Positions 7,409 to 15,383 of a stretch of 64,000 nucleotides of DNA are shown one piece after another. The stretch is taken from IMG/VR virus record IMGVR_UViG_3300041411_000178, positions 62,001 through 126,000 of that record. One strand, given 5' to 3'. The first letter of the stretch is position 1. Every line of letters begins with the position of its first letter. Position numbers and translations under genes: made by a program. A model generated the notes under the pieces. That model did no database searches. It was not told the origin of the DNA and saw only the letters and a program-made list of their open reading frames with translations.

Positions 7409-9586
7409 GTGAGTGATAAGAGTAAAGATTCTCCTGATGAGGTCAAAGTTCCCGAAGTGGGACTCGGCCGATTTAAGAAGTGGGCTTACCTAGGCGAGAA
7501 CCAACTGCATCCGGCTGTAATGGGTGTTTGTGCAAACCTGGTAGTGTTCCCATGGGTATCGTCACCTACCCGTATTTACATGGTAGGCAACATGATCCCG
7601 AAGTCTGTTGTGACTTCGGGTGCAAGTGAGCGTAAACTTAAATCTGGCAACGAATACCAATATGCCAAACGCGCTCGCTGTGTTGAAGCTCCATCCAACA
7701 TGACGATTGAGGAAATCTTCTACGCCCAAGCTGTTAACGGAGGAGAAGGCGACACTGACAAATGGGCGCCGGTGTATGTGGTGTTCCGCAACGAGGAGAA
7801 GGGCAAGTACGATATCATGGAGTTTCCACGGTATAACGTACAAAACTCCTACGTTGGCTTTGAATATGTGTATGACATGAATGTCATGCGCAAGCTGAAG
7901 AAAGGTGCAACGTTCCCTAAAGGTACGATCTTTGCCAAATCCCCACGCATCAGTAAAGATGGCGAATGGATGTTTGGTATGGACCTCAAGGTAGCGCCGG
8001 CATCGTTCCACTATACCGAGGAGGACGGCATCGGCATTACCGAGAGCTGTGCTCGTGATAAGCTGCGTTGCATGTTTGAACATGTACGCGCTCACGGTTG
8101 GAACGAAGACGAGTGGGTTCCGCTGACGCTGTACGGAGATAGCCCATTCCCGCAAAGTGGTGAACGTATTCGTGAAGATGGCATTGTGATGGGTTTCCGT
8201 CGTCGTGTCTCTGCGAACGCGTTGGTGTCGCTCACCAAGAAAGCTTTGACCATTCCAGACGAGACACACGACATCCTGTTCAGGGCACCGGTGGACTCTG
8301 AGGTCATGTCGGTTGAAGTGATCAGTGAGCGCATGAAGAACAAGTCGAATAACCGTTCGACTGATTATATCAAACAGGCCCACACGAACATGCTGGAACG
8401 CTACGAGCGTCGCCAGAACGACATGTGGAACGAGGTGATCCGTTGGCACAGTGGTCGTGTATCGGCTAACCGTGGTAACCCAATCGCCATGACCCGTCCT
8501 TTGAATCGGTTTATCCGCTTCGCTAAGGGCAACTACACCATCAATGCGAATACCGGTAAACCCAACCCGCTGTTCCGTGCTGTGAAGCGTGTACGTGTTA
8601 AAGACTGGAGCATTACGATCCGGTTGCGTGAAATCGTTTCGGGCCGTGCAAAGTTCAAGATGTCGGGTATGAACGGCGACAAGGGTGTAATCGTTCGGAT
8701 CATCCCAGACGAAGATGCTCCGCGTTATGACGATGGTACTGTGTGTGACGTTGTGGTTAACAACACACCAGCCTTCCGTCGTCAGATCTTCTCGATGCTG
8801 ATGGAACAGTCGATCAACTTTATCAACGTCAACGTCCACAAGGAAGTTGTCAAGTTGCATAAGGAAGGCGACTACATTGGTGCCATGGAAAAACTGATGC
8901 TGTTCTACGAGACTGGGTTCCCAGAGTTCGCAGAGCTGGTACAGCAGACCATGGTGACCCGTGAGGACATCGTCGAGTACGTCAACGACATCGCGGCTAC
9001 GCAGATCAGTGTGCATGTGCGTAGCGACACCAAGCTCTACGGCGTTGAGATCATCAAAGCCCTGCGTAAGGTGTACAGCTACAAGCCTGAGCAAATCACT
9101 TTCCGAGATTCCCTCGGCGAGATGGTTCGGTCTGTCAACCCAGTACTGATCACGAACCAGCACTTCATGCTGTTGGACAAGTTCGGTACTGACATGTCGG
9201 CTCAGTCGCTGCCAATGTCTAACCCGTTCGGTATGCCAGCCAAACTTAACGAGGCCAACAAGTATTCCAGTTGGCTGCGGATGGTCTGGAACCGGAACAA
9301 GGGTGAAACAGAAGCACGGCTTACATTGAGCCAGGCAGGTGCTAAAGAAACGGTCAAGCAATTGGCCATGGGGTATGCACCTGAACTCCGTACGCGGATG
9401 GCACAGCGTGTGGTGCGGGCTGAGGATGGGTTTAACATCAACCAGATCATCAAGCCTGACGAGTATGGGTTAAACCGAGCAGTACAAATGTCGCAGAGCA
9501 TGCTCAGTGACTCCGGCTACACCCTGCGTCGTGAACTACCGTCTGACCGTTCAGATTATGAACCGCCTGTTAAGGAGTCCCTGTAA
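7409..9586 (+). CDS. rpoB: Non-virion RNA polymerase beta subunit, C-terminal part (phiKZ gp71-73-like)
   Basis: 725 aa, GTG start with GGAG upstream. KFKMSGMNGDKGVIVRIIPDEDAP matches the beta GDK...GxKG...P motif, and the C-terminal GETEAR matches GEME. Confidence 0.9.
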   Translation: MSDKSKDSPDEVKVPEVGLGRFKKWAYLGENQLHPAVMGVCANLVVFPWVSSPTRIYMVGNMIPKSVVTSGASERKLKSGNEYQYAKRARCVEAPSNMTIEEIFYAQAVNGGEGDTDKWAPVYVVFRNEEKGKYDIMEFPRYNVQNSYVGFEYVYDMNVMRKLKKGATFPKGTIFAKSPRISKDGEWMFGMDLKVAPASFHYTEEDGIGITESCARDKLRCMFEHVRAHGWNEDEWVPLTLYGDSPFPQSGERIREDGIVMGFRRRVSANALVSLTKKALTIPDETHDILFRAPVDSEVMSVEVISERMKNKSNNRSTDYIKQAHTNMLERYERRQNDMWNEVIRWHSGRVSANRGNPIAMTRPLNRFIRFAKGNYTINANTGKPNPLFRAVKRVRVKDWSITIRLREIVSGRAKFKMSGMNGDKGVIVRIIPDEDAPRYDDGTVCDVVVNNTPAFRRQIFSMLMEQSINFINVNVHKEVVKLHKEGDYIGAMEKLMLFYETGFPEFAELVQQTMVTREDIVEYVNDIAATQISVHVRSDTKLYGVEIIKALRKVYSYKPEQITFRDSLGEMVRSVNPVLITNQHFMLLDKFGTDMSAQSLPMSNPFGMPAKLNEANKYSSWLRMVWNRNKGETEARLTLSQAGAKETVKQLAMGYAPELRTRMAQRVVRAEDGFNINQIIKPDEYGLNRAVQMSQSMLSDSGYTLRRELPSDRSDYEPPVKESL

Positions 9587-11580
9587 TGGCCTTGCAAATT
9601 AACCTACGGGAGTTTGCTAACCTGCCTGAACACCAGGTATTGCGTTGGCGTGGTTTCCGTATGGCCGTTGAGGTCACGGATGACCAAGGGGAAAAGGTGC
9701 TGAGTGATAGTTATGCCATGCTGCTAACCTGGCAAGGCATGATGATTCACCGGCAATACAACAACGTACCGTACTCCGTTAAAGAGATCATCCCAACTGG
9801 CAAGAGCGTCGTGTATAACAACAAGACGCTCGCTATTCCGATGAACTGGATCATGGGTGAGATTGGACCCACCATTCATGATCCAGTGGAATGGGATTCA
9901 ATCAAGATGACCATTCACATGTGGCAGACCAAGCTTAACAACTTGATCGTGGTCATGAGTGAGACGTCGGTTATCTCGGCGATGGCGGAATCGGTAGACG
10001 ACCTGATCGAAGATCCGGGTATCCGCGAGATCCACCGCAAGGTACTCGATCGGGAAGTTACGATTGACGAAGGGGAAGAACTGTTCTCTGTTTACCTGAA
10101 GACGTCCGAGACATTGGATTACAACACGGTAGCCTTGCTGGCACGTACGGGTGGTGTGAGTATCAACCAAGCGTATCAAACGGCGATCATTCGAGGTGCA
10201 GTATTCGACCTTGATAACACCATCATGCCAAACGCTGTTATGGCGCGGTATGCGGATGGTGTGACCAACCTGGCAGACGCCATTGGTGATAACCGTGGTG
10301 CGGGTAAGGCACTCAACAGTAACGGTCGTGCACTGAAAGACTCGGAATGGTTTCACCGGAAGATTCACTTGTTCACGGCGATTATCCATTCCATCGGTCA
10401 CATGGAAGACTGCGGCTCGCTCGACACCGTGCCGCTGCGCATTGCGTCGACTGAGATGGCTAAGAGCCTGCTGGGTTCTTATCGTGTCCTGGAAGACGGC
10501 GCACTGGATCTGATCACAGCGCATAACTTCAAGTTGATCAAAGCAGGCGAGATCGTCAACCTGCGTAACGTGGGCTTCTGTAACAGTCCAAGTGGCACAC
10601 CGTGTGGCGTGTGTTATGGCATGATGAAGTCCGCCATCCCGTACAACCGGATGATGAAGAAGGATGCCAACATCGGCATGTTTGCCGGCACCACGATCTG
10701 TAACCCATTGGGTCAGAAAATGCTGTCGACCAAACACTTCATCCGTAACGCCACGAGCAAGAAGTTTGTACCTCATCACCGGGACAAGGAGATCATCCGT
10801 TCCAACGGCGATCAAATCTTCCTGGAGAAAGAGCTCTGCAAGGAAGGGACGCGACTGATTCTTAAGTCGACCATTGTGAAAGATTTGTCTGACCTGCGTT
10901 CCTTGGACATCATGGACGAGATCGCACTCAGCAAGTTGCCTTACTTTGGTGAAGTCACCTTCCAATATGAGGTGGAAGACATCATGGTGGGCGGTACCAC
11001 CACTCAGCAACATCCAGCGCAGACATCTGTATCGTCTCGCCGTGCCCGCTTTTCTATGGGATTCCTCCAGTATATACTGGACAATGGCTGGACCAACCAG
11101 GATAAGAAGTTTATCTCGGTTGATCTGTCCAAATGGAACAGTGAAGACCCTATGTTCGTGTTGCCCTATGTCCGTGAGGACTTGGACGCACACCGGGCTC
11201 GGGTGGAAAACTTCCTTACGTTCAACAAACGTAACGCGGCGTGGAAGAAGCAAGTTGTTACTCCGAAAGTCTTCGGGGAAGTCCTGGCCGAGTTCTGGTC
11301 GTTGATCGATGCTGAAACTAAAGGCATCAACATGATCTACGTCTCTGTGATCTTGGCTTGTGCGCTGACTAAGGATCCAGCGAATCATTCGTATAAGCTG
11401 GCAACCGGTCCTGGTGATAAGTACTTCACCAGTTTTGTAACCTGTGTGGACAACCGCGGTTCGGGTACGATGTCGATCTTTGAACGGCAGCAAAACATCC
11501 TGAACCTTCCGAAAACCTTTGCGGTTAAAGACCGTCAACCAAGTGTGCTGGAGTGCTTCCTGCAACACGCGGTGTCATAA
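9586..11580 (+). CDS. rpoC: Non-virion RNA polymerase beta' subunit, C-terminal part (phiKZ gp74-like)
   Basis: 664 aa. Bridge-helix-like ALKDSEWFHRKI, EDCGS, zinc cysteines (CNSP..PCGVCYG) and trigger-loop-like GMFAGTTICNPLGQKMLSTKH. 1-nt stop/start overlap with the beta gene. Confidence 0.9.
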   Translation: MALQINLREFANLPEHQVLRWRGFRMAVEVTDDQGEKVLSDSYAMLLTWQGMMIHRQYNNVPYSVKEIIPTGKSVVYNNKTLAIPMNWIMGEIGPTIHDPVEWDSIKMTIHMWQTKLNNLIVVMSETSVISAMAESVDDLIEDPGIREIHRKVLDREVTIDEGEELFSVYLKTSETLDYNTVALLARTGGVSINQAYQTAIIRGAVFDLDNTIMPNAVMARYADGVTNLADAIGDNRGAGKALNSNGRALKDSEWFHRKIHLFTAIIHSIGHMEDCGSLDTVPLRIASTEMAKSLLGSYRVLEDGALDLITAHNFKLIKAGEIVNLRNVGFCNSPSGTPCGVCYGMMKSAIPYNRMMKKDANIGMFAGTTICNPLGQKMLSTKHFIRNATSKKFVPHHRDKEIIRSNGDQIFLEKELCKEGTRLILKSTIVKDLSDLRSLDIMDEIALSKLPYFGEVTFQYEVEDIMVGGTTTQQHPAQTSVSSRRARFSMGFLQYILDNGWTNQDKKFISVDLSKWNSEDPMFVLPYVREDLDAHRARVENFLTFNKRNAAWKKQVVTPKVFGEVLAEFWSLIDAETKGINMIYVSVILACALTKDPANHSYKLATGPGDKYFTSFVTCVDNRGSGTMSIFERQQNILNLPKTFAVKDRQPSVLECFLQHAVS

Positions 11581-11639: not shown

Positions 11640-13976
11640 ATGAGGCATTCCGCCACGTTATCCACGGGTCACACTTATCTGCGAATCTTTGGGTACTACG
11701 GCGATTTCTGTGCAAAGGTAATCATCCCTTTTTGCCGCGCTCATCTGTACAAGACTGGTAAGGTTCCACTGCCAGGCACCAATAAACAGGTTTGGAAAGT
11801 GACCCACGTGTTCGCTCAGTCTAACCACGACAAAACTGAGTACCGCATTCCCGTGAGCTTAATGAAGGAATTCATTGAGTTTGCACAATACCGGGGTTAC
11901 AACACTTCCCGGATTGCTATTCAAACAGAACCAGAGATCGAAGGTGCAGATTGTGAGTTTCAACTGCGCCCTGAAATGTCCACTCCCCTGCCTGAACAGG
12001 AAGAGTGGATTGAGTACCAGTTAGCAGAAGGTGCCATCAAGATCAACAACGCCCCTACGGGCGGTGGTAAGGCGCTGGCCAATGATACACCGGTCAGAAC
12101 CATCCACGGTTGGCGTCCTATTGGTCAGATCAAGGTTAATGACCTTGTCATGGCCCCTGACGGCTCCCACACGTACGTTACAGGCGTTTTCCCACAAGGG
12201 AGAACACGGACTTACCATCTGATGTTTGAGGACCGCAGATCGATTGTGGCGTGCCCTGAGCATCAGTGGGAAGTTCGGGCTGAAGGTGAGACCGAATGGC
12301 AGGTACTGACTACGCAACAATTGGTAGACAGTGGCAAGACTTGGTACATTCCGTTAACCGCCAGCGAACGCAATCCTGACCGTGGGGATATCATCGAGCC
12401 TTACCTGATTGGCAAGACTGATCGGATTCTCGGTGAGAAGTATTTGGAAGGTTCTCACTCTCAGCGGATGGCGTTGTTACGCGGTTTGCTGGACAATGGG
12501 GGTGAACCACAACGTGACGGTTCGATTGTCTTCAAGACCGAATACGGTATCACTGCCAAGATGGTTCGTGATCTGGTTCGGAGCATTGGGGGGATTGCAG
12601 AAGCCAAGTTCAAGAAGTTTAAGAACTCGGTTATCCTGCGGCATCGGACTCCGGAGATCCTCTTCACTGATGAAGCGAAGCAGGACAAGTTGCGGAACTC
12701 GGAGAATCGGGATCTGGCATTAAAGATCCTGCAAATCACCGAGGGTAATCCAACCGAGACCACCTGCATCGCTGTAGAGCACCCTAGCCACTGTTTCGTG
12801 GTAAAGGACTACATTGTTACCCACAACACCTACATGAGTCTCTACACGGCCGTGCAGCTCGGCAAGCGGATCCTCATTACGGTACAGCCACGTTACATCA
12901 CCACCTGGATCAATGACATCGAGAAAACGTTGATCACGAAGCCAGGCGACATCGTGGTGTGGGAAAACGCTTCGCTACCGTTGCTGGGGGAGAACATCGA
13001 GAAGGGGATCCTCAATCCCAAGATCGTTATTGTTCCATTCTCTCGGATCTCGGGCTACCTGCGTAACAATCGCAAGGATCCTCATGCAGTACCGCTTGGC
13101 AAGATCTTTGAACAGATCAACCCGGGCCTGCGTATTGTGGATGAGGGACACGAATCGTTCCACGAGATCTGTCTGTCGCTGTTCCATGGCAACGTTAAGA
13201 AGTTGATTACCAACTCGGCTACATTGAGTGGTGATGATCCGTTCATGAACCGGATGTACAACTTGATGCTGCCAATCAGTCTCAGGCTTAAGGAACCTGA
13301 TCCCGAGAACTACATCGACATTGTTGCTTACATGTATCACTTGTGTCAGCGCAAGTACTTCTTGAAGACGATGCAGTTTGGCAGTTATAACGACATGGCG
13401 CTGGAGGCGTCGATTCTGCGCAGTCCGGTGTTAACGGAGTTCTACTTCAAGATTGCGGACAAGATGTTCCAGGAGTATTACATTGGGGTAGGTAATCCCG
13501 GTGAGTACGGCTACATTCCTCCCATACGGGAAGAGGGTACCAAAGCGTTGTTCTTCTTCTCACGGATTGAGATGTGTGAAACCATGCTGGCTATGTTCCA
13601 GCGGAAGTACCCACACTTGGACTTCTGTACCTTCCTCGGTACCAAGGACAAGAAGACACCAACGAAGTACCTGGAGCACGAGATCGTTATTACCACACCG
13701 GGCAGTTGCGGTACGGGTAAGGACATCCCAGGTCTGGTCAGGACGTTCTGTTTCCACACGGTCTTCTCGACGCAACGGAACAAACAAATGATCGGGCGCT
13801 TGCGTCAGTTCCGTGGGAAGTTCTCTCACTTCATTGGTCGGATCACCCCAATGTTTATCTTTGCGTTCTGTAACGACATCGGTAAGCACCAGGAGTGTTT
13901 CCAGAAGAGACGCATTGCTTTTGCCAGTAAGGAAAAGGACTTCAAACTTATTGAATCTAACTGCTCGCTCAATTAA
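11640..13976 (+). CDS. SF2 DExH helicase (phiKZ gp75-like) interrupted by an intein
   Basis: Walker A APTGGGK/T split by a 252-aa insert. Walker B IVDEGHE, motif III SAT and motif VI QMIGRLRQ are present. Confidence 0.88.
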   Translation: MRHSATLSTGHTYLRIFGYYGDFCAKVIIPFCRAHLYKTGKVPLPGTNKQVWKVTHVFAQSNHDKTEYRIPVSLMKEFIEFAQYRGYNTSRIAIQTEPEIEGADCEFQLRPEMSTPLPEQEEWIEYQLAEGAIKINNAPTGGGKALANDTPVRTIHGWRPIGQIKVNDLVMAPDGSHTYVTGVFPQGRTRTYHLMFEDRRSIVACPEHQWEVRAEGETEWQVLTTQQLVDSGKTWYIPLTASERNPDRGDIIEPYLIGKTDRILGEKYLEGSHSQRMALLRGLLDNGGEPQRDGSIVFKTEYGITAKMVRDLVRSIGGIAEAKFKKFKNSVILRHRTPEILFTDEAKQDKLRNSENRDLALKILQITEGNPTETTCIAVEHPSHCFVVKDYIVTHNTYMSLYTAVQLGKRILITVQPRYITTWINDIEKTLITKPGDIVVWENASLPLLGENIEKGILNPKIVIVPFSRISGYLRNNRKDPHAVPLGKIFEQINPGLRIVDEGHESFHEICLSLFHGNVKKLITNSATLSGDDPFMNRMYNLMLPISLRLKEPDPENYIDIVAYMYHLCQRKYFLKTMQFGSYNDMALEASILRSPVLTEFYFKIADKMFQEYYIGVGNPGEYGYIPPIREEGTKALFFFSRIEMCETMLAMFQRKYPHLDFCTFLGTKDKKTPTKYLEHEIVITTPGSCGTGKDIPGLVRTFCFHTVFSTQRNKQMIGRLRQFRGKFSHFIGRITPMFIFAFCNDIGKHQECFQKRRIAFASKEKDFKLIESNCSLN
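12072..12827 (+). mobile_element. Class 3 intein (252 aa) with degenerate LAGLIDADG endonuclease
   Basis: Begins ALANDTPV and ends IVTHN before Thr+1. Block B CPEHQW, block F TTCIAV, block G VTHN; LLRGLLDNGG and VRDLVRSIGG are endonuclease remnants. Confidence 0.88.
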
Positions 13977-14008: not shown

Positions 14009-14449
14009 ATGCACAAATACGCAAGCGGTAAAAAGACTGTCACCAAGGCTGTGATACTGGAGTGCCACTGCCTTGGGTTAGCCGGGGATCTGGTGCGTAC
14101 AGTTGTTGGTGAATCCATTTCTGATTTTCTGCTGAACCTAACCGACGTTGATGCTCGCATCGATGACGAGTGGTACTATTCGCTTCTGAGAGATCGTCTT
14201 TACAACGACGACGGAGAAGTGATCTCCTGGTGGTATTCCGAACAGGAGAAGTTGATGTTTGAACGGGACCCACACGGGCACCTGATGTTGTACGGAAACC
14301 AGGTAAGTGGGTATCTGGAATCCATCGCGGCTGATAACGAGGACACTATTAACATGATCTACGCCAGCATGTCGCTGGAGGAAATCACTGTGAGTAGCAT
14401 TGCCCTCAAAGATAAGCTTATCCTTCTTGTGAGAGGAAAACAACCATGA
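14009..14449 (+). CDS. Hypothetical acidic protein
   Basis: 146 aa, overlapping the next start by 4 nt. Confidence 0.6.
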   Translation: MHKYASGKKTVTKAVILECHCLGLAGDLVRTVVGESISDFLLNLTDVDARIDDEWYYSLLRDRLYNDDGEVISWWYSEQEKLMFERDPHGHLMLYGNQVSGYLESIAADNEDTINMIYASMSLEEITVSSIALKDKLILLVRGKQP

Positions 14450-14823
14450 TGACGAAAAGTCACTTCATTCCTACCCCGGGCATTGAGCAACTCCCGCACT
14501 ACTTCATTATCCAGAAGTTGATCGAAGAACGCATTCGGTCGATTCTCCAGGGTGACAGTTTTGTGGACAAGTCGCACTTCCTGGTGGGCCACTACACCAC
14601 GATCCCGACGAACCTGACCACGCCGGAGCAGGTGACCAGCTACACCAACGAGATGGCGAAGACGGTGCTGGATACCTTCAAGGAGTTCGAGAAGAATCCG
14701 GAATACCACGATGCCATCCTCCAGCTCAAGCCGTACGAGAACACGATGTTCCAGATCATCAGCACGACCTACGTGGGCGTTCAGGTCCTGCTGAAATTCG
14801 AAGATAAGGACATGGCGAGTTAA
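14446..14823 (+). CDS. Hypothetical protein
   Basis: 125 aa, GAGG upstream, phage-typical codon bias. Confidence 0.7.
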   Translation: MMTKSHFIPTPGIEQLPHYFIIQKLIEERIRSILQGDSFVDKSHFLVGHYTTIPTNLTTPEQVTSYTNEMAKTVLDTFKEFEKNPEYHDAILQLKPYENTMFQIISTTYVGVQVLLKFEDKDMAS

Positions 14824-15383
14824 TGCTCTCATTCATCCTTAAGCTAGACCCTGAAACCCGAGAGGAGCTTTACTCAGATGTTGCGGTAGAGTTCCTCGAC
14901 TTGATTATGTTGGAGGCAATCTTTGTCATCTTTCAGATGGCGAACCCGTACGACTATCCACTGGTAGACGATATCGAATACCTGGCGGATGATCCGGACT
15001 CACAGTTCGAGGCTTCAGTAGAGTATCTGCTGGGCGTCTTGGCGGAAACGAATCCGATGGACGGGGTGCTAACGCCCAACGTGGAAGACTTGGTCGAATA
15101 TGACCCGGGTTACCGCGATGCCATCATGATCAAGTTGGGTGCAGCGGTTGATGCGATTAACGCCATGAACGATCCTTCTGAAATGGCAGCCATCAAGAAT
15201 ATCTTGTCGCAGCCTGGTTTCCAGAAGCGATTCAAATTCAACTCCCTGCATTTGAACGATCGAGTGGTTTACAGCATTTCTCCTGACGCGCTGGACTCGT
15301 TGGGGTTGCCGACCATTCCTCGGATAGGCTCTTTGATCGGTGGTGTGACCGCTGATGGATTGCCTGTTTTGCCTTTATGCTGA
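14823..15383 (+). CDS. Hypothetical acidic protein
   Basis: 186 aa, 1-nt stop/start overlap, ends just before a hairpin. Confidence 0.7.
   Translation: MLSFILKLDPETREELYSDVAVEFLDLIMLEAIFVIFQMANPYDYPLVDDIEYLADDPDSQFEASVEYLLGVLAETNPMDGVLTPNVEDLVEYDPGYRDAIMIKLGAAVDAINAMNDPSEMAAIKNILSQPGFQKRFKFNSLHLNDRVVYSISPDALDSLGLPTIPRIGSLIGGVTADGLPVLPLC

What the first reader, a model, noticed from the sequence alone, without database searches (positions are those of the whole stretch)
12072..12827. Ala-initiated class 3 intein with a decayed homing endonuclease in the helicase P-loop
The insert sits between K and T of Walker A (APTGGGK|T). It starts with Ala rather than Cys or Ser, so it cannot use the class 1 N-S shift. 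It carries the class 3 WCT triad: Trp in block B (HQW), Cys at F4 (TTCIAV) and Thr in block G (VTHN). The LAGLIDADG part looks broken: after EPYLIG the first motif and spacer seem deleted, and the second motif reads LDNGG instead of the usual xDxDG. This suggests a non-mobile intein whose splicing gates helicase activity, possibly under redox control through the F4 Cys (inference).
Basis: partly seen in the sequence, partly recalled or inferred. Interest (0 to 1): 0.7.

Follow-up and report, generated by a model that had tools for sequence, protein, structure and literature searches.

The report
Class 3 intein in phage helicase
A self-splicing protein insert (a class 3 intein) interrupts the ATP-binding loop of a giant phage's helicase; it is a normal member of a widespread phage intein family, but it has lost half of its homing nuclease and keeps the other half under strong selection.

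Summary
Window 12072-12827 (+) is a 252-codon in-frame insert between Lys and Thr of Walker A (GGGK|T) in a 778-aa SF2 helicase. This helicase is the syntenic orthologue of phiKZ gp75 and EL gp040, in an uncultivated 224-kb EL-like jumbo phage. Intein-less alleles fix both boundaries exactly.

It meets every sequence criterion of class 3. It starts with Ala1 and has His64-x-Trp66, Cys232 at F4 and Thr250-His251-Asn252, followed by Thr+1. These residues are invariant in 40 aligned inteins from this site. Its closest natural solved relatives are the mycobacterial class 3 DnaB inteins.

The nuclease is truncated. LAGLIDADG motif 1 and about 94 residues are missing, and motif 2 has lost its catalytic Asp (Gly143).

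- The remnant is not decaying. It models as a complete half-domain (pLDDT 96) and is under strong purifying selection (53 synonymous versus 2 replacement codon differences to one relative).
- The short intein is not strictly immobile. Intein and helicase trees conflict, so it has moved between helicase lineages.

Redox gating is untested. The known DnaBi1 partner cysteine is absent, although a clade-specific Cys61 occupies block B position 7.

Verdict: a new member of a known kind, of modest interest.

The parts
11640..13976 (+). Helicase precursor ORF (778 aa). It is an SF2 helicase and the syntenic orthologue of EL gp040 and phiKZ gp75. It lies directly downstream of an RNA polymerase beta-type subunit gene (9586-11580).
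   Evidence: The exteins match phrog_16 DNA helicase. Conserved motifs are GxGK|T, DEGH, SAT and QxxGRxR.
11640..12071 (+). N-extein (aa 1-144), ending in the first part of Walker A (APTGGGK).
12072..12827 (+). Class 3 intein, 252 aa (ALANDTPV...IVTHN).
   Evidence: Boundaries are set by intein-less alleles. PDB phmmer gives 6BS8 at E 5e-8. AF2 gives pLDDT 96.4. Foldseek returns inteins.
12072..12371 (+). N-terminal part of the Hint splicing domain (intein aa 1-100; blocks A and B).
12252..12254 (+). Cys61 at block B position 7 (CPEH). It aligns with Asp62 of the DxxH motif of M. smegmatis DnaBi1. It is Cys in all 15 inteins of the 'AL' type and G/D/N in the other type.
   Evidence: PMC6195587.
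12261..12269 (+). Block B His64 (B10) and Trp66 (B12, the W of the WCT signature).
   Evidence: Invariant in 40 of 40 inteins.
12396..12416 (+). EPYLIGK: the stub of LAGLIDADG motif 1 (block C). The deletion junction lies between Lys115 and Thr116 (12416|12417). About 94 residues present in full-length relatives are missing here.
12384..12707 (+). Retained half of the LAGLIDADG nuclease domain (intein aa 105-212), modelled as helix 129-143, two strands, helix 159-171, two strands. It is catalytically dead but under purifying selection.
   Evidence: No Pfam LAGLIDADG match.
12474..12503 (+). LAGLIDADG motif 2 (block E), LLRGLLDNGG. The catalytic Asp of the DTDG found in full-length relatives is Gly143 here.
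12573..12599 (+). Nuclease block H helix, LVRSIGGIA. L168, V169, S171, G174 and A176 are nearly invariant, and G173 is invariant across long and short inteins.
12708..12827 (+). C-terminal part of the Hint domain (intein aa 213-252; blocks F and G).
12765..12767 (+). Cys232 at block F position 4, the predicted initiating nucleophile of class 3 splicing.
   Evidence: It aligns with Cys118 of DnaBi1 and is invariant in 40 of 40 inteins.
12819..12827 (+). Block G Thr250 (G5), His251 and the terminal Asn252.
   Evidence: Invariant in 40 of 40 inteins.
12828..13976 (+). C-extein (382 aa plus stop). Its first residue, Thr+1 (12828-12830), is both the Walker A Thr and the C-terminal splicing nucleophile.

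Best explanation
The insert is a functional class 3 intein at the classic P-loop site of an essential jumbo-phage SF2 helicase.

The helicase is translated as a 778-aa precursor whose Walker A motif is split, so it is presumably inactive as an ATPase. Splicing is inferred to follow the class 3 route established for relatives:
1. Cys232 (F4), positioned by His64, Trp66 and Thr250, attacks the Lys144-Ala1 peptide bond and forms a block F branched thioester.
2. The N-extein is passed to the side chain of Thr+1.
3. Asn252 cyclises and releases the intein.
4. An O-to-N shift restores GGGKT in a 526-aa helicase.

The intein descends from a full-length LAGLIDADG intein of the same site. A single ancestral deletion removed nuclease blocks C and D, and the catalytic Asp of block E was then lost, so it cannot cut DNA by itself. 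The surviving half-domain is kept by selection. The most likely reason is that the splicing domain has come to depend on it for folding. This part is inference.

The element persists mainly by vertical descent. It is occasionally transferred between helicase alleles by recombination, possibly at breaks made by full-length inteins that target the same site.
For: Shown by these analyses:
- Exact boundaries from empty alleles.
- An intact frame in a core gene found in 290 phage records.
- Ala1 plus H64, W66, C232, T250, H251, N252 and T+1, all invariant in 40 inteins.
- The best natural solved relatives are the class 3 DnaB inteins 6BS8 and 6RIX (E 5e-8 and 8e-6). The top hit overall, 6RIZ, is an engineered gp41-1 carrying the WCT motif. 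Foldseek gives TM 0.82-0.86 relative to the class 3 DnaB chains and 0.69-0.78 to PI-SceI.
- A confident fold: pLDDT 96.4, pTM 0.92.
- dN/dS of 0.03-0.17 over the intein. In the nuclease remnant there are 53 synonymous versus 2 replacement codon differences (window vs L088) and 42 versus 5 (window vs L008).
- All 19 'AL-short' inteins form one clade (100/100) with the same deletion junction, sister to full-length forms.
- The catalytic Asp143 is present in every intein of 343 aa or more and absent in all AL-short ones.
- Tree incongruence: p-AU 0.009 on the intein tree and 4e-5 on the extein tree.
- Helicases about 95% identical in DNA carry different inteins.

From the literature: the class 3 definition and mechanism (PMC3196547, PMC5050341, PMC7664689).
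Against: No experiment shows splicing of this intein or any jumbo-phage relative. The mechanism is inferred from sequence signatures. Grafting WCT onto a class 1 intein did not yield splicing (PMC7664689), so the triad alone is not sufficient. Block B position 7 is Cys rather than the Asp of DnaBi1, and its effect is unknown. The reason the half-domain is conserved is not established. dS is near saturation for most pairs, so only the three closest comparisons are quantitative. The clade groupings for the AU tests were chosen after I had seen identity values.
Confidence: 0.85

Rival explanations
1. The intein is a conditional switch. Oxidants or zinc trap Cys232, for example in a disulfide with Cys61 or Cys241, and delay helicase maturation until conditions are favourable. 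smegmatis DnaBi1.
For: It is homologous to DnaBi1, whose F4 Cys forms a regulatory disulfide (PMC6195587). The window intein has two extra cysteines. Cys61 sits at block B position 7 next to the catalytic His and is conserved in all 15 AL-type inteins.
Against: The DnaBi1 partner Cys48 aligns with Thr47 here. Cys241 is present in only 7 of 40 inteins, and the Q-type inteins at the same site have no Cys61. A lytic phage with a short infection cycle has no obvious use for a stress pause.
Confidence: 0.15
2. The retained half-nuclease has a function of its own. It might bind DNA or dimerise to couple splicing to DNA or to assembly, or it might help the element spread. In that case it is not merely a folding scaffold.
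For: Replacement changes in the remnant are rarer than in the exteins (Fisher p 1.5e-5 for window vs L088). Length was stable at 248-255 aa in 18 of 19 clade members while the clade diverged to 47% identity. Blocks E and H are conserved across long and short forms. A homodimer prediction passed its mark (ipSAE 0.54, best of 3 controls 0.27; the mark was reached by 21 of 30 solved homodimers and 0 of 23 monomers; runs agree in at least 94% of contacts, partner pLDDT at least 92).
Against: The predicted dimer interface uses Hint residues 11, 21-36, 100-103 and 128. It does not use the LAGLIDADG helix, so it is not an I-CreI-like pairing. Other window comparisons show the remnant no more constrained than the rest. 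Nuclease-domain deletions commonly impair intein folding (my own knowledge, not tested here), and this suffices to explain the conservation.
Confidence: 0.25
3. The insert is a dead intein or a permanent insertion that is never spliced, and the helicase works with it or is dispensable.
For: No direct evidence. Non-splicing class 3-like pseudo-inteins exist, such as Arth_1007 (PMC3196547).
Against: That pseudo-intein lacks F4 Cys and B10 His, whereas both are invariant here. The insert splits Walker A of a gene conserved across phiKZ-like phages. There is strong purifying selection on the whole intein.
Confidence: 0.03
4. It splices by a class 2-like route, with Thr+1 attacking the N-terminal junction directly and Cys232 playing only a supporting role.
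For: Ala1 is also compatible with class 2 (PMC7664689).
Against: Class 2 inteins are known only in KlbA (PMC3196547). The WCT triad is invariant here. The nearest natural solved relatives are class 3.
Confidence: 0.04

Closest known systems
Mycobacterial class 3 DnaB inteins (M. smegmatis DnaBi1, PDB 6BS8; M. chimaera DnaB1, 6RIX/6RIY)
   Same: P-loop insertion in a helicase. Same start (ALAxDTP). HxW in block B, Cys at F4, and THN followed by a hydroxyl nucleophile. Sequence E 5e-8 and fold TM 0.82-0.86.
   Different: They are mini-inteins of about 139-146 aa with a disordered linker instead of a folded half-nuclease. Block B position 7 is Asp there and Cys here. The redox partner Cys48 is Thr47 here. 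The host is bacterial DnaB, not a phage SF2 helicase.
Mycobacteriophage class 3 inteins (Bethlehem DnaB, Catera gp206 helicase, P-loop inteins of large terminases)
   Same: Phage-borne class 3 inteins between the Walker A Lys and Thr, with LAGLIDADG-type nucleases. tblastn finds 165 Mycobacterium phage records, for example Gaia terminase at 33% identity over the full length (PMC5050341, PMC3196547).
   Different: Most of those keep a canonical two-motif nuclease. Their hosts are actinobacteriophages, not phiKZ-like jumbo phages.
Intein of Pseudomonas phage EL gp040 and other phiKZ-like helicase inteins (unannotated in the records)
   Same: Same gene, same site, class 3 signature, similar size (EL 248 aa), and loss of the first nuclease half.
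   Different: EL belongs to the other ('Q') intein lineage: 35% identity, Met1, Gly at block B position 7. Its deletion has different boundaries, so it is an independent truncation.
PI-SceI and other LAGLIDADG intein endonucleases
   Same: Overall Hint plus nuclease architecture; best Foldseek matches (TM 0.69-0.78 relative to the model).
   Different: They are class 1 inteins with two complete nuclease halves and catalytic acidic residues. The window has one half and no catalytic Asp.

Membership tests
Intein (Hint-domain protein-splicing element) | In-frame insertion in a conserved host protein that is absent from orthologues, with exact boundaries | tested here: met
   58 of 105 homologue clusters, RisingSun gp45 and phiKZ gp75 have an uninterrupted GK-T/S.
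Intein (Hint-domain protein-splicing element) | Hint fold with blocks A, B, F and G, block B His, terminal His-Asn and a +1 nucleophile | tested here: met
   AF2 pLDDT 96.4. Foldseek returns inteins. H64, H251, N252 and T+1 are invariant.
Intein (Hint-domain protein-splicing element) | Protein splicing actually occurs | not testable with these tools
   Needs expression and detection of the spliced helicase and the free intein.
Class 3 intein | No Cys/Ser/Thr nucleophile at intein position 1 | tested here: met
   Ala1 (GCG, 12072-12074). Among 40 site-mates the first residue is A, G, E, D, L, F or M, with one Ser.
Class 3 intein | WCT signature: Trp at B12, Cys at F4, Thr at G5 | tested here: met
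   W66, C232 and T250 are invariant in 40 of 40 inteins. C232 aligns with DnaBi1 Cys118.
Class 3 intein | Belongs to the monophyletic class 3 clade | tested here: inconclusive
   The nearest natural solved sequences are class 3. About 546 IMG/VR relatives share the signature. [quoted passage not shown]
Class 3 intein | Block F branched thioester intermediate on the F4 Cys | not testable with these tools
   This is a biochemical criterion (PMC3196547).
Active LAGLIDADG homing endonuclease | Two LAGLIDADG motifs (or one plus homodimerisation through that helix) | tested here: not met
   Motif 1 and block D are deleted. The predicted homodimer does not use the LAGLIDADG helix. There is no PF14528 match, unlike full-length relatives.
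Active LAGLIDADG homing endonuclease | Catalytic acidic residue at the end of each motif | tested here: not met
   Gly143 replaces the Asp of DTDG. The Asp is kept in all inteins of 343 aa or more.
Redox-gated intein of the DnaBi1 type | A non-catalytic Cys equivalent to Cys48 that pairs with the F4 Cys | tested here: not met
   The aligned residue is Thr47. Other cysteines (61, 241) exist, but their geometry is untested.

The most novel reading that the evidence does not exclude
The short intein may be a non-autonomous mobile element. It has lost its own nuclease, keeps a selected half-domain, and spreads by using double-strand breaks made at the same helicase site by the full-length inteins of co-infecting phages. 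It would then be the protein-level analogue of a non-autonomous transposon. Alternatively, the conserved half-domain may have gained a new DNA-binding or regulatory role that makes helicase maturation conditional.
Probability: 0.25. Interest if true: 0.5.

Novelty: new member of a known kind. Interest (0 to 1): 0.3.

Why it matters
Class 3 inteins at the Walker A Lys|Thr site of phage ATPases have been known since 2010, so the core finding is ordinary.

What it adds:
- The phiKZ/EL-type jumbo-phage helicase is a heavily used intein site, occupied in 47 of 105 clusters. It shows all stages of the homing cycle side by side: empty, full-length, and truncated in several independent ways.
- The inteins explain why GenBank records often call this helicase a 'terminase large subunit' or a homing endonuclease.
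- A stable, selected half-LAGLIDADG module in an intein that still moves between alleles is a tidy system for two questions: why nuclease remnants persist, and whether nuclease-less inteins can be mobilised in trans.
- Compact class 3 inteins with a folded internal domain may also interest protein engineers.

Tried and rejected
- Megablast of the gene against cultured phage records found nothing. The own genome is withheld and the nearest cultured relative is only 52% identical in protein.
- Pfam gives only sub-threshold hits for the intein (Hom_end_hint, E 0.018) and none for the nuclease remnant or for the ORFs overlapping the intein in other frames and on the other strand. I therefore rejected an antisense or out-of-frame nuclease gene. 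High synonymous divergence also argues against an overlapping gene.
- An I-CreI-like homodimer through the LAGLIDADG helix was tested by complex prediction. A dimer is predicted, but through the Hint domain, so that idea is not supported.
I repeated it without them.
- I could not obtain model coordinates, so Cys-Cys distances were not measured.
- Base composition gives no sign of recent foreign origin: intein GC is 52%, exteins 49-50%.
- A literature search found no description of the jumbo-phage helicase inteins. The 2011 paper on the phage origin of class 3 inteins was not in the searchable library and is cited only through PMC3196547.
- My automatic intein-start finder for the 80 IMG/VR loci failed on about a dozen, so I use that length distribution only qualitatively.
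Full report
**Where the feature lies.** The window is bases 62001-126000 of a 224,004-bp virus record with direct terminal repeats, estimated complete. The finding sits in ORF 11640-13976 (+), 778 aa. The flanking parts of this protein match phrog_16 'DNA helicase', and the upstream gene 9586-11580 is an RNA polymerase beta-type subunit. By tblastn the C-terminal 382 aa match 290 phage records, all phiKZ-like jumbo phages. The best are Pseudomonas phage EL and its relatives at 52% identity. Gene order is the same as in EL (gp039 RNAP, gp040 helicase), RisingSun (gp44, gp45) and phiKZ (gp74 RNAP, gp75 helicase). The host protein is therefore the gp75-type SF2 helicase of an uncultivated EL-like jumbo phage. 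The conserved motifs GxGK-T, DEGH, SAT and QxxGRxR are visible in the alignment.

**Checking the observation.** An alignment with intein-less RisingSun gp45 (510 aa) fixes the insert at residues 145-396, which is nt 12072-12827, between ...PTGGGK and TYMSLY.... phiKZ gp75 (537 aa) is also uninterrupted (TGKGK-TLTSL).
- Of 105 metagenomic helicase clusters found with the C-extein, 58 have an empty site and 47 carry an insert exactly there. Every insert ends in VTHN followed by Thr.
Only the F4 Cys codon needs correcting, to 12765-12767.

**What the insert is.** A phmmer search of the PDB returns only inteins at significant E-values.
- The top hit is an engineered gp41-1 that carries the WCT motif (6RIZ).
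- The next is the class 3 DnaB intein of M. smegmatis (6BS8, E 5e-8), followed by wild-type gp41-1 (6QAZ) and the M. chimaera DnaB1 intein (6RIX/6RIY).
- The 6BS8 alignment pairs ALANDTP with ALALDTP, EHQW with QHQW, TTCIAV with VRCVEV, and VTHN with PTHN.

An AlphaFold2 model built on 40 site-mates is very confident (pLDDT 96.4, pTM 0.92). Foldseek matches PI-SceI-type inteins over the whole model (TM 0.69-0.78) and the class 3 DnaB inteins over the splicing domain (TM 0.82-0.86 relative to those chains).

In the 40-sequence alignment, His64, Trp66, Cys232, Thr250, His251 and Asn252 are invariant. The first residue is A, G, E, D, L, F or M, with Ser once and never Cys. These are the published defining features of class 3 inteins: no position-1 nucleophile, Trp at B12, Cys at F4 and Thr at G5 (PMC3196547, PMC5050341, PMC7664689). 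The Lys|Thr P-loop position is called the 'classic' intein site (PMC5050341).

A scan of IMG/VR with the alignment found at least 546 related inteins. In the 80 best, the junctions are almost always GK|x ... [VL]THN|[TS] in various ATPases. The element therefore belongs to a very large, phage-borne class 3 P-loop intein family.

**The nuclease part.**
- Full-length inteins at this site (343-387 aa) carry two LAGLIDADG motifs and a Pfam LAGLIDADG_3 match.
- The window intein keeps only EPYLIGK of motif 1. It then lacks about 94 residues (blocks C and D) and resumes at TDRILGEKYLEGS.
- Motif 2 reads LLRGLLDNGG. The Asp that ends DTDG in every intein of 343 aa or more is Gly143 here, and it is absent in all inteins of the same clade.
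- No LAGLIDADG Pfam match remains.

**The remnant is not a decaying relic.**
- In the model it forms a complete half-domain: helix 129-143, two strands, helix 159-171, two strands.
- Blocks E and H stay conserved across long and short inteins. R132, L136, L168, V169, S171, G174 and A176 are nearly invariant, and G173 is invariant.
- Codon comparisons with three relatives whose DNA I could fetch show strong purifying selection in residues 101-212. There are 53 synonymous-only versus 2 amino-acid-changing codon differences to L088, 42 versus 5 to L008, and 35 versus 26 to the more distant L009.
- This is at least as constrained as the splicing domain and the helicase itself. For the L088 pair, the Fisher test against the exteins gives p 1.5e-5.
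- Synonymous sites are near saturation in more distant pairs, so only the close pairs are quantitative.

**Evolution and mobility.**
- On a tree of 72 helicase exteins, full-length inteins are scattered almost at random (13 changes for 14 rows), and near-identical helicases occur with and without them. This is the signature of active homing.
- The window's type ('AL-short') is clustered (6 changes for 17 rows; never this low in 500 shuffles).
- On the intein tree the 19 AL-short inteins form one clade (100/100) with the same deletion junction, sister to full-length AL-type inteins. This indicates one ancient truncation.
- EL and several other lineages lost the same half with different boundaries, so the loss is recurrent.
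- The short intein has nevertheless moved. The intein tree rejects the grouping seen in the helicase tree (p-AU 0.009), and the helicase tree rejects the intein grouping (p-AU 4e-5).
- The window's intein is 69-71% identical to inteins whose helicases are only 58% identical. It is 50-51% identical to inteins in closer helicases at 65-66%.
- In one case two helicase genes that differ at roughly 5% of extein nucleotides carry an AL-short intein and a full-length Q-type intein, and a third, more distant relative (roughly 15-20% of extein nucleotides differ) has an empty site.
- I chose the tested groups after seeing identities, and all sequences are metagenomic assemblies. These are caveats.

**Mechanism.** The helicase must be made as a precursor with a split Walker A. 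By homology, Cys232 attacks the Lys144-Ala1 bond, the N-extein moves to Thr+1, Asn252 cyclises, and an acyl shift restores GGGKT. These steps are shown for Bethlehem DnaB, Dra Snf2, Catera gp206 and the mycobacterial DnaB inteins (PMC3196547, PMC6195587). They are inferred here.

That partner is Thr47 here. The window has Cys61 at block B position 7, where DnaBi1 has Asp62, and this Cys is conserved in all 15 AL-type inteins. It also has Cys241, found in 7 of 40 inteins.

A homodimer prediction passed its mark. The ipSAE was 0.54 against a best of 3 controls of 0.27. The mark was reached by 21 of 30 solved homodimers and 0 of 23 monomers. Runs agree in at least 94% of contacts, and partner pLDDT is at least 92. 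The interface is on the Hint domain, not the LAGLIDADG helix, so it gives no support to an I-CreI-like reconstitution of a nuclease.

**Comparison with the known, and verdict.** This is a new member of the known class 3 P-loop intein family. It is closest in sequence to the mycobacterial DnaB mini-inteins and to mycobacteriophage helicase and terminase inteins. It shares its site with the unannotated intein of phage EL gp040. I found no paper describing inteins in the phiKZ-type helicase, but the kind of element is well established.

The points of modest interest are:
- the selected half-nuclease;
- the Cys at block B position 7;
- the evidence that a nuclease-less intein still changes hosts.

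Interest 0.3.

Noticed in passing
Own genome outside the window: G000:C1:206777-207568 (-), locus L005: A second class 3 P-loop intein (about 264 aa; GSGK|AMPLST...HLW...ACISI...VTHN|T) in an SNF2-like helicase. It also lacks recognisable catalytic LAGLIDADG motifs.
   Followed up: partly
Own genome outside the window: G000:C1:38059-38955 (+), loci L006/L007: A third class 3 P-loop intein (PRQQGK|YQDDND...HLW...CTCIEV...VTHN|T) in a terminase-like protein. Both LAGLIDADG motifs are present but degenerate (LIGGQ, LDQGA). All three inteins of this phage therefore appear to be nuclease-dead.
   Followed up: partly
window 11640-13976 and its homologues in GenBank phage records: Orthologues of this helicase are variously annotated as 'terminase large subunit', 'DOD-type homing endonuclease', 'DarB-like antirestriction' or 'transcript termination protein'. 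The intein alone matches PHROG families named terminase large subunit, helicase loader and primase. The inserted intein therefore probably drives annotation-transfer errors.
   Followed up: partly
Proteins P0016, P0017, P0019; P0025 and P0032; P0052 and P0064: Near-identical helicase exteins occur with an empty site, or with different full-length inteins (346 aa and 374 aa with different first residues). This indicates ongoing homing and intein replacement at this site in natural populations.
   Followed up: partly
L089 7127-7636 and L095 5489-5571 (relatives' contigs): Weak or faint HNH_3 matches in small genes about 2 kb downstream of the helicase in two related phages. These are possible free-standing homing endonucleases near the intein site. 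The corresponding window ORFs (14009-15383) have no such match.
   Followed up: no
window 12072-12827 (intein), complex prediction: A symmetric homodimer is predicted through Hint-domain residues 11, 21-25, 33, 35-36, 100-103 and 128. The ipSAE was 0.54 against a best of 3 controls of 0.27. The mark was reached by 21 of 30 solved homodimers and 0 of 23 monomers. Runs agree in at least 94% of contacts, and partner pLDDT is at least 92. Its meaning is unknown.
   Followed up: no
The TGC codon is 12765-12767.
   Followed up: yes
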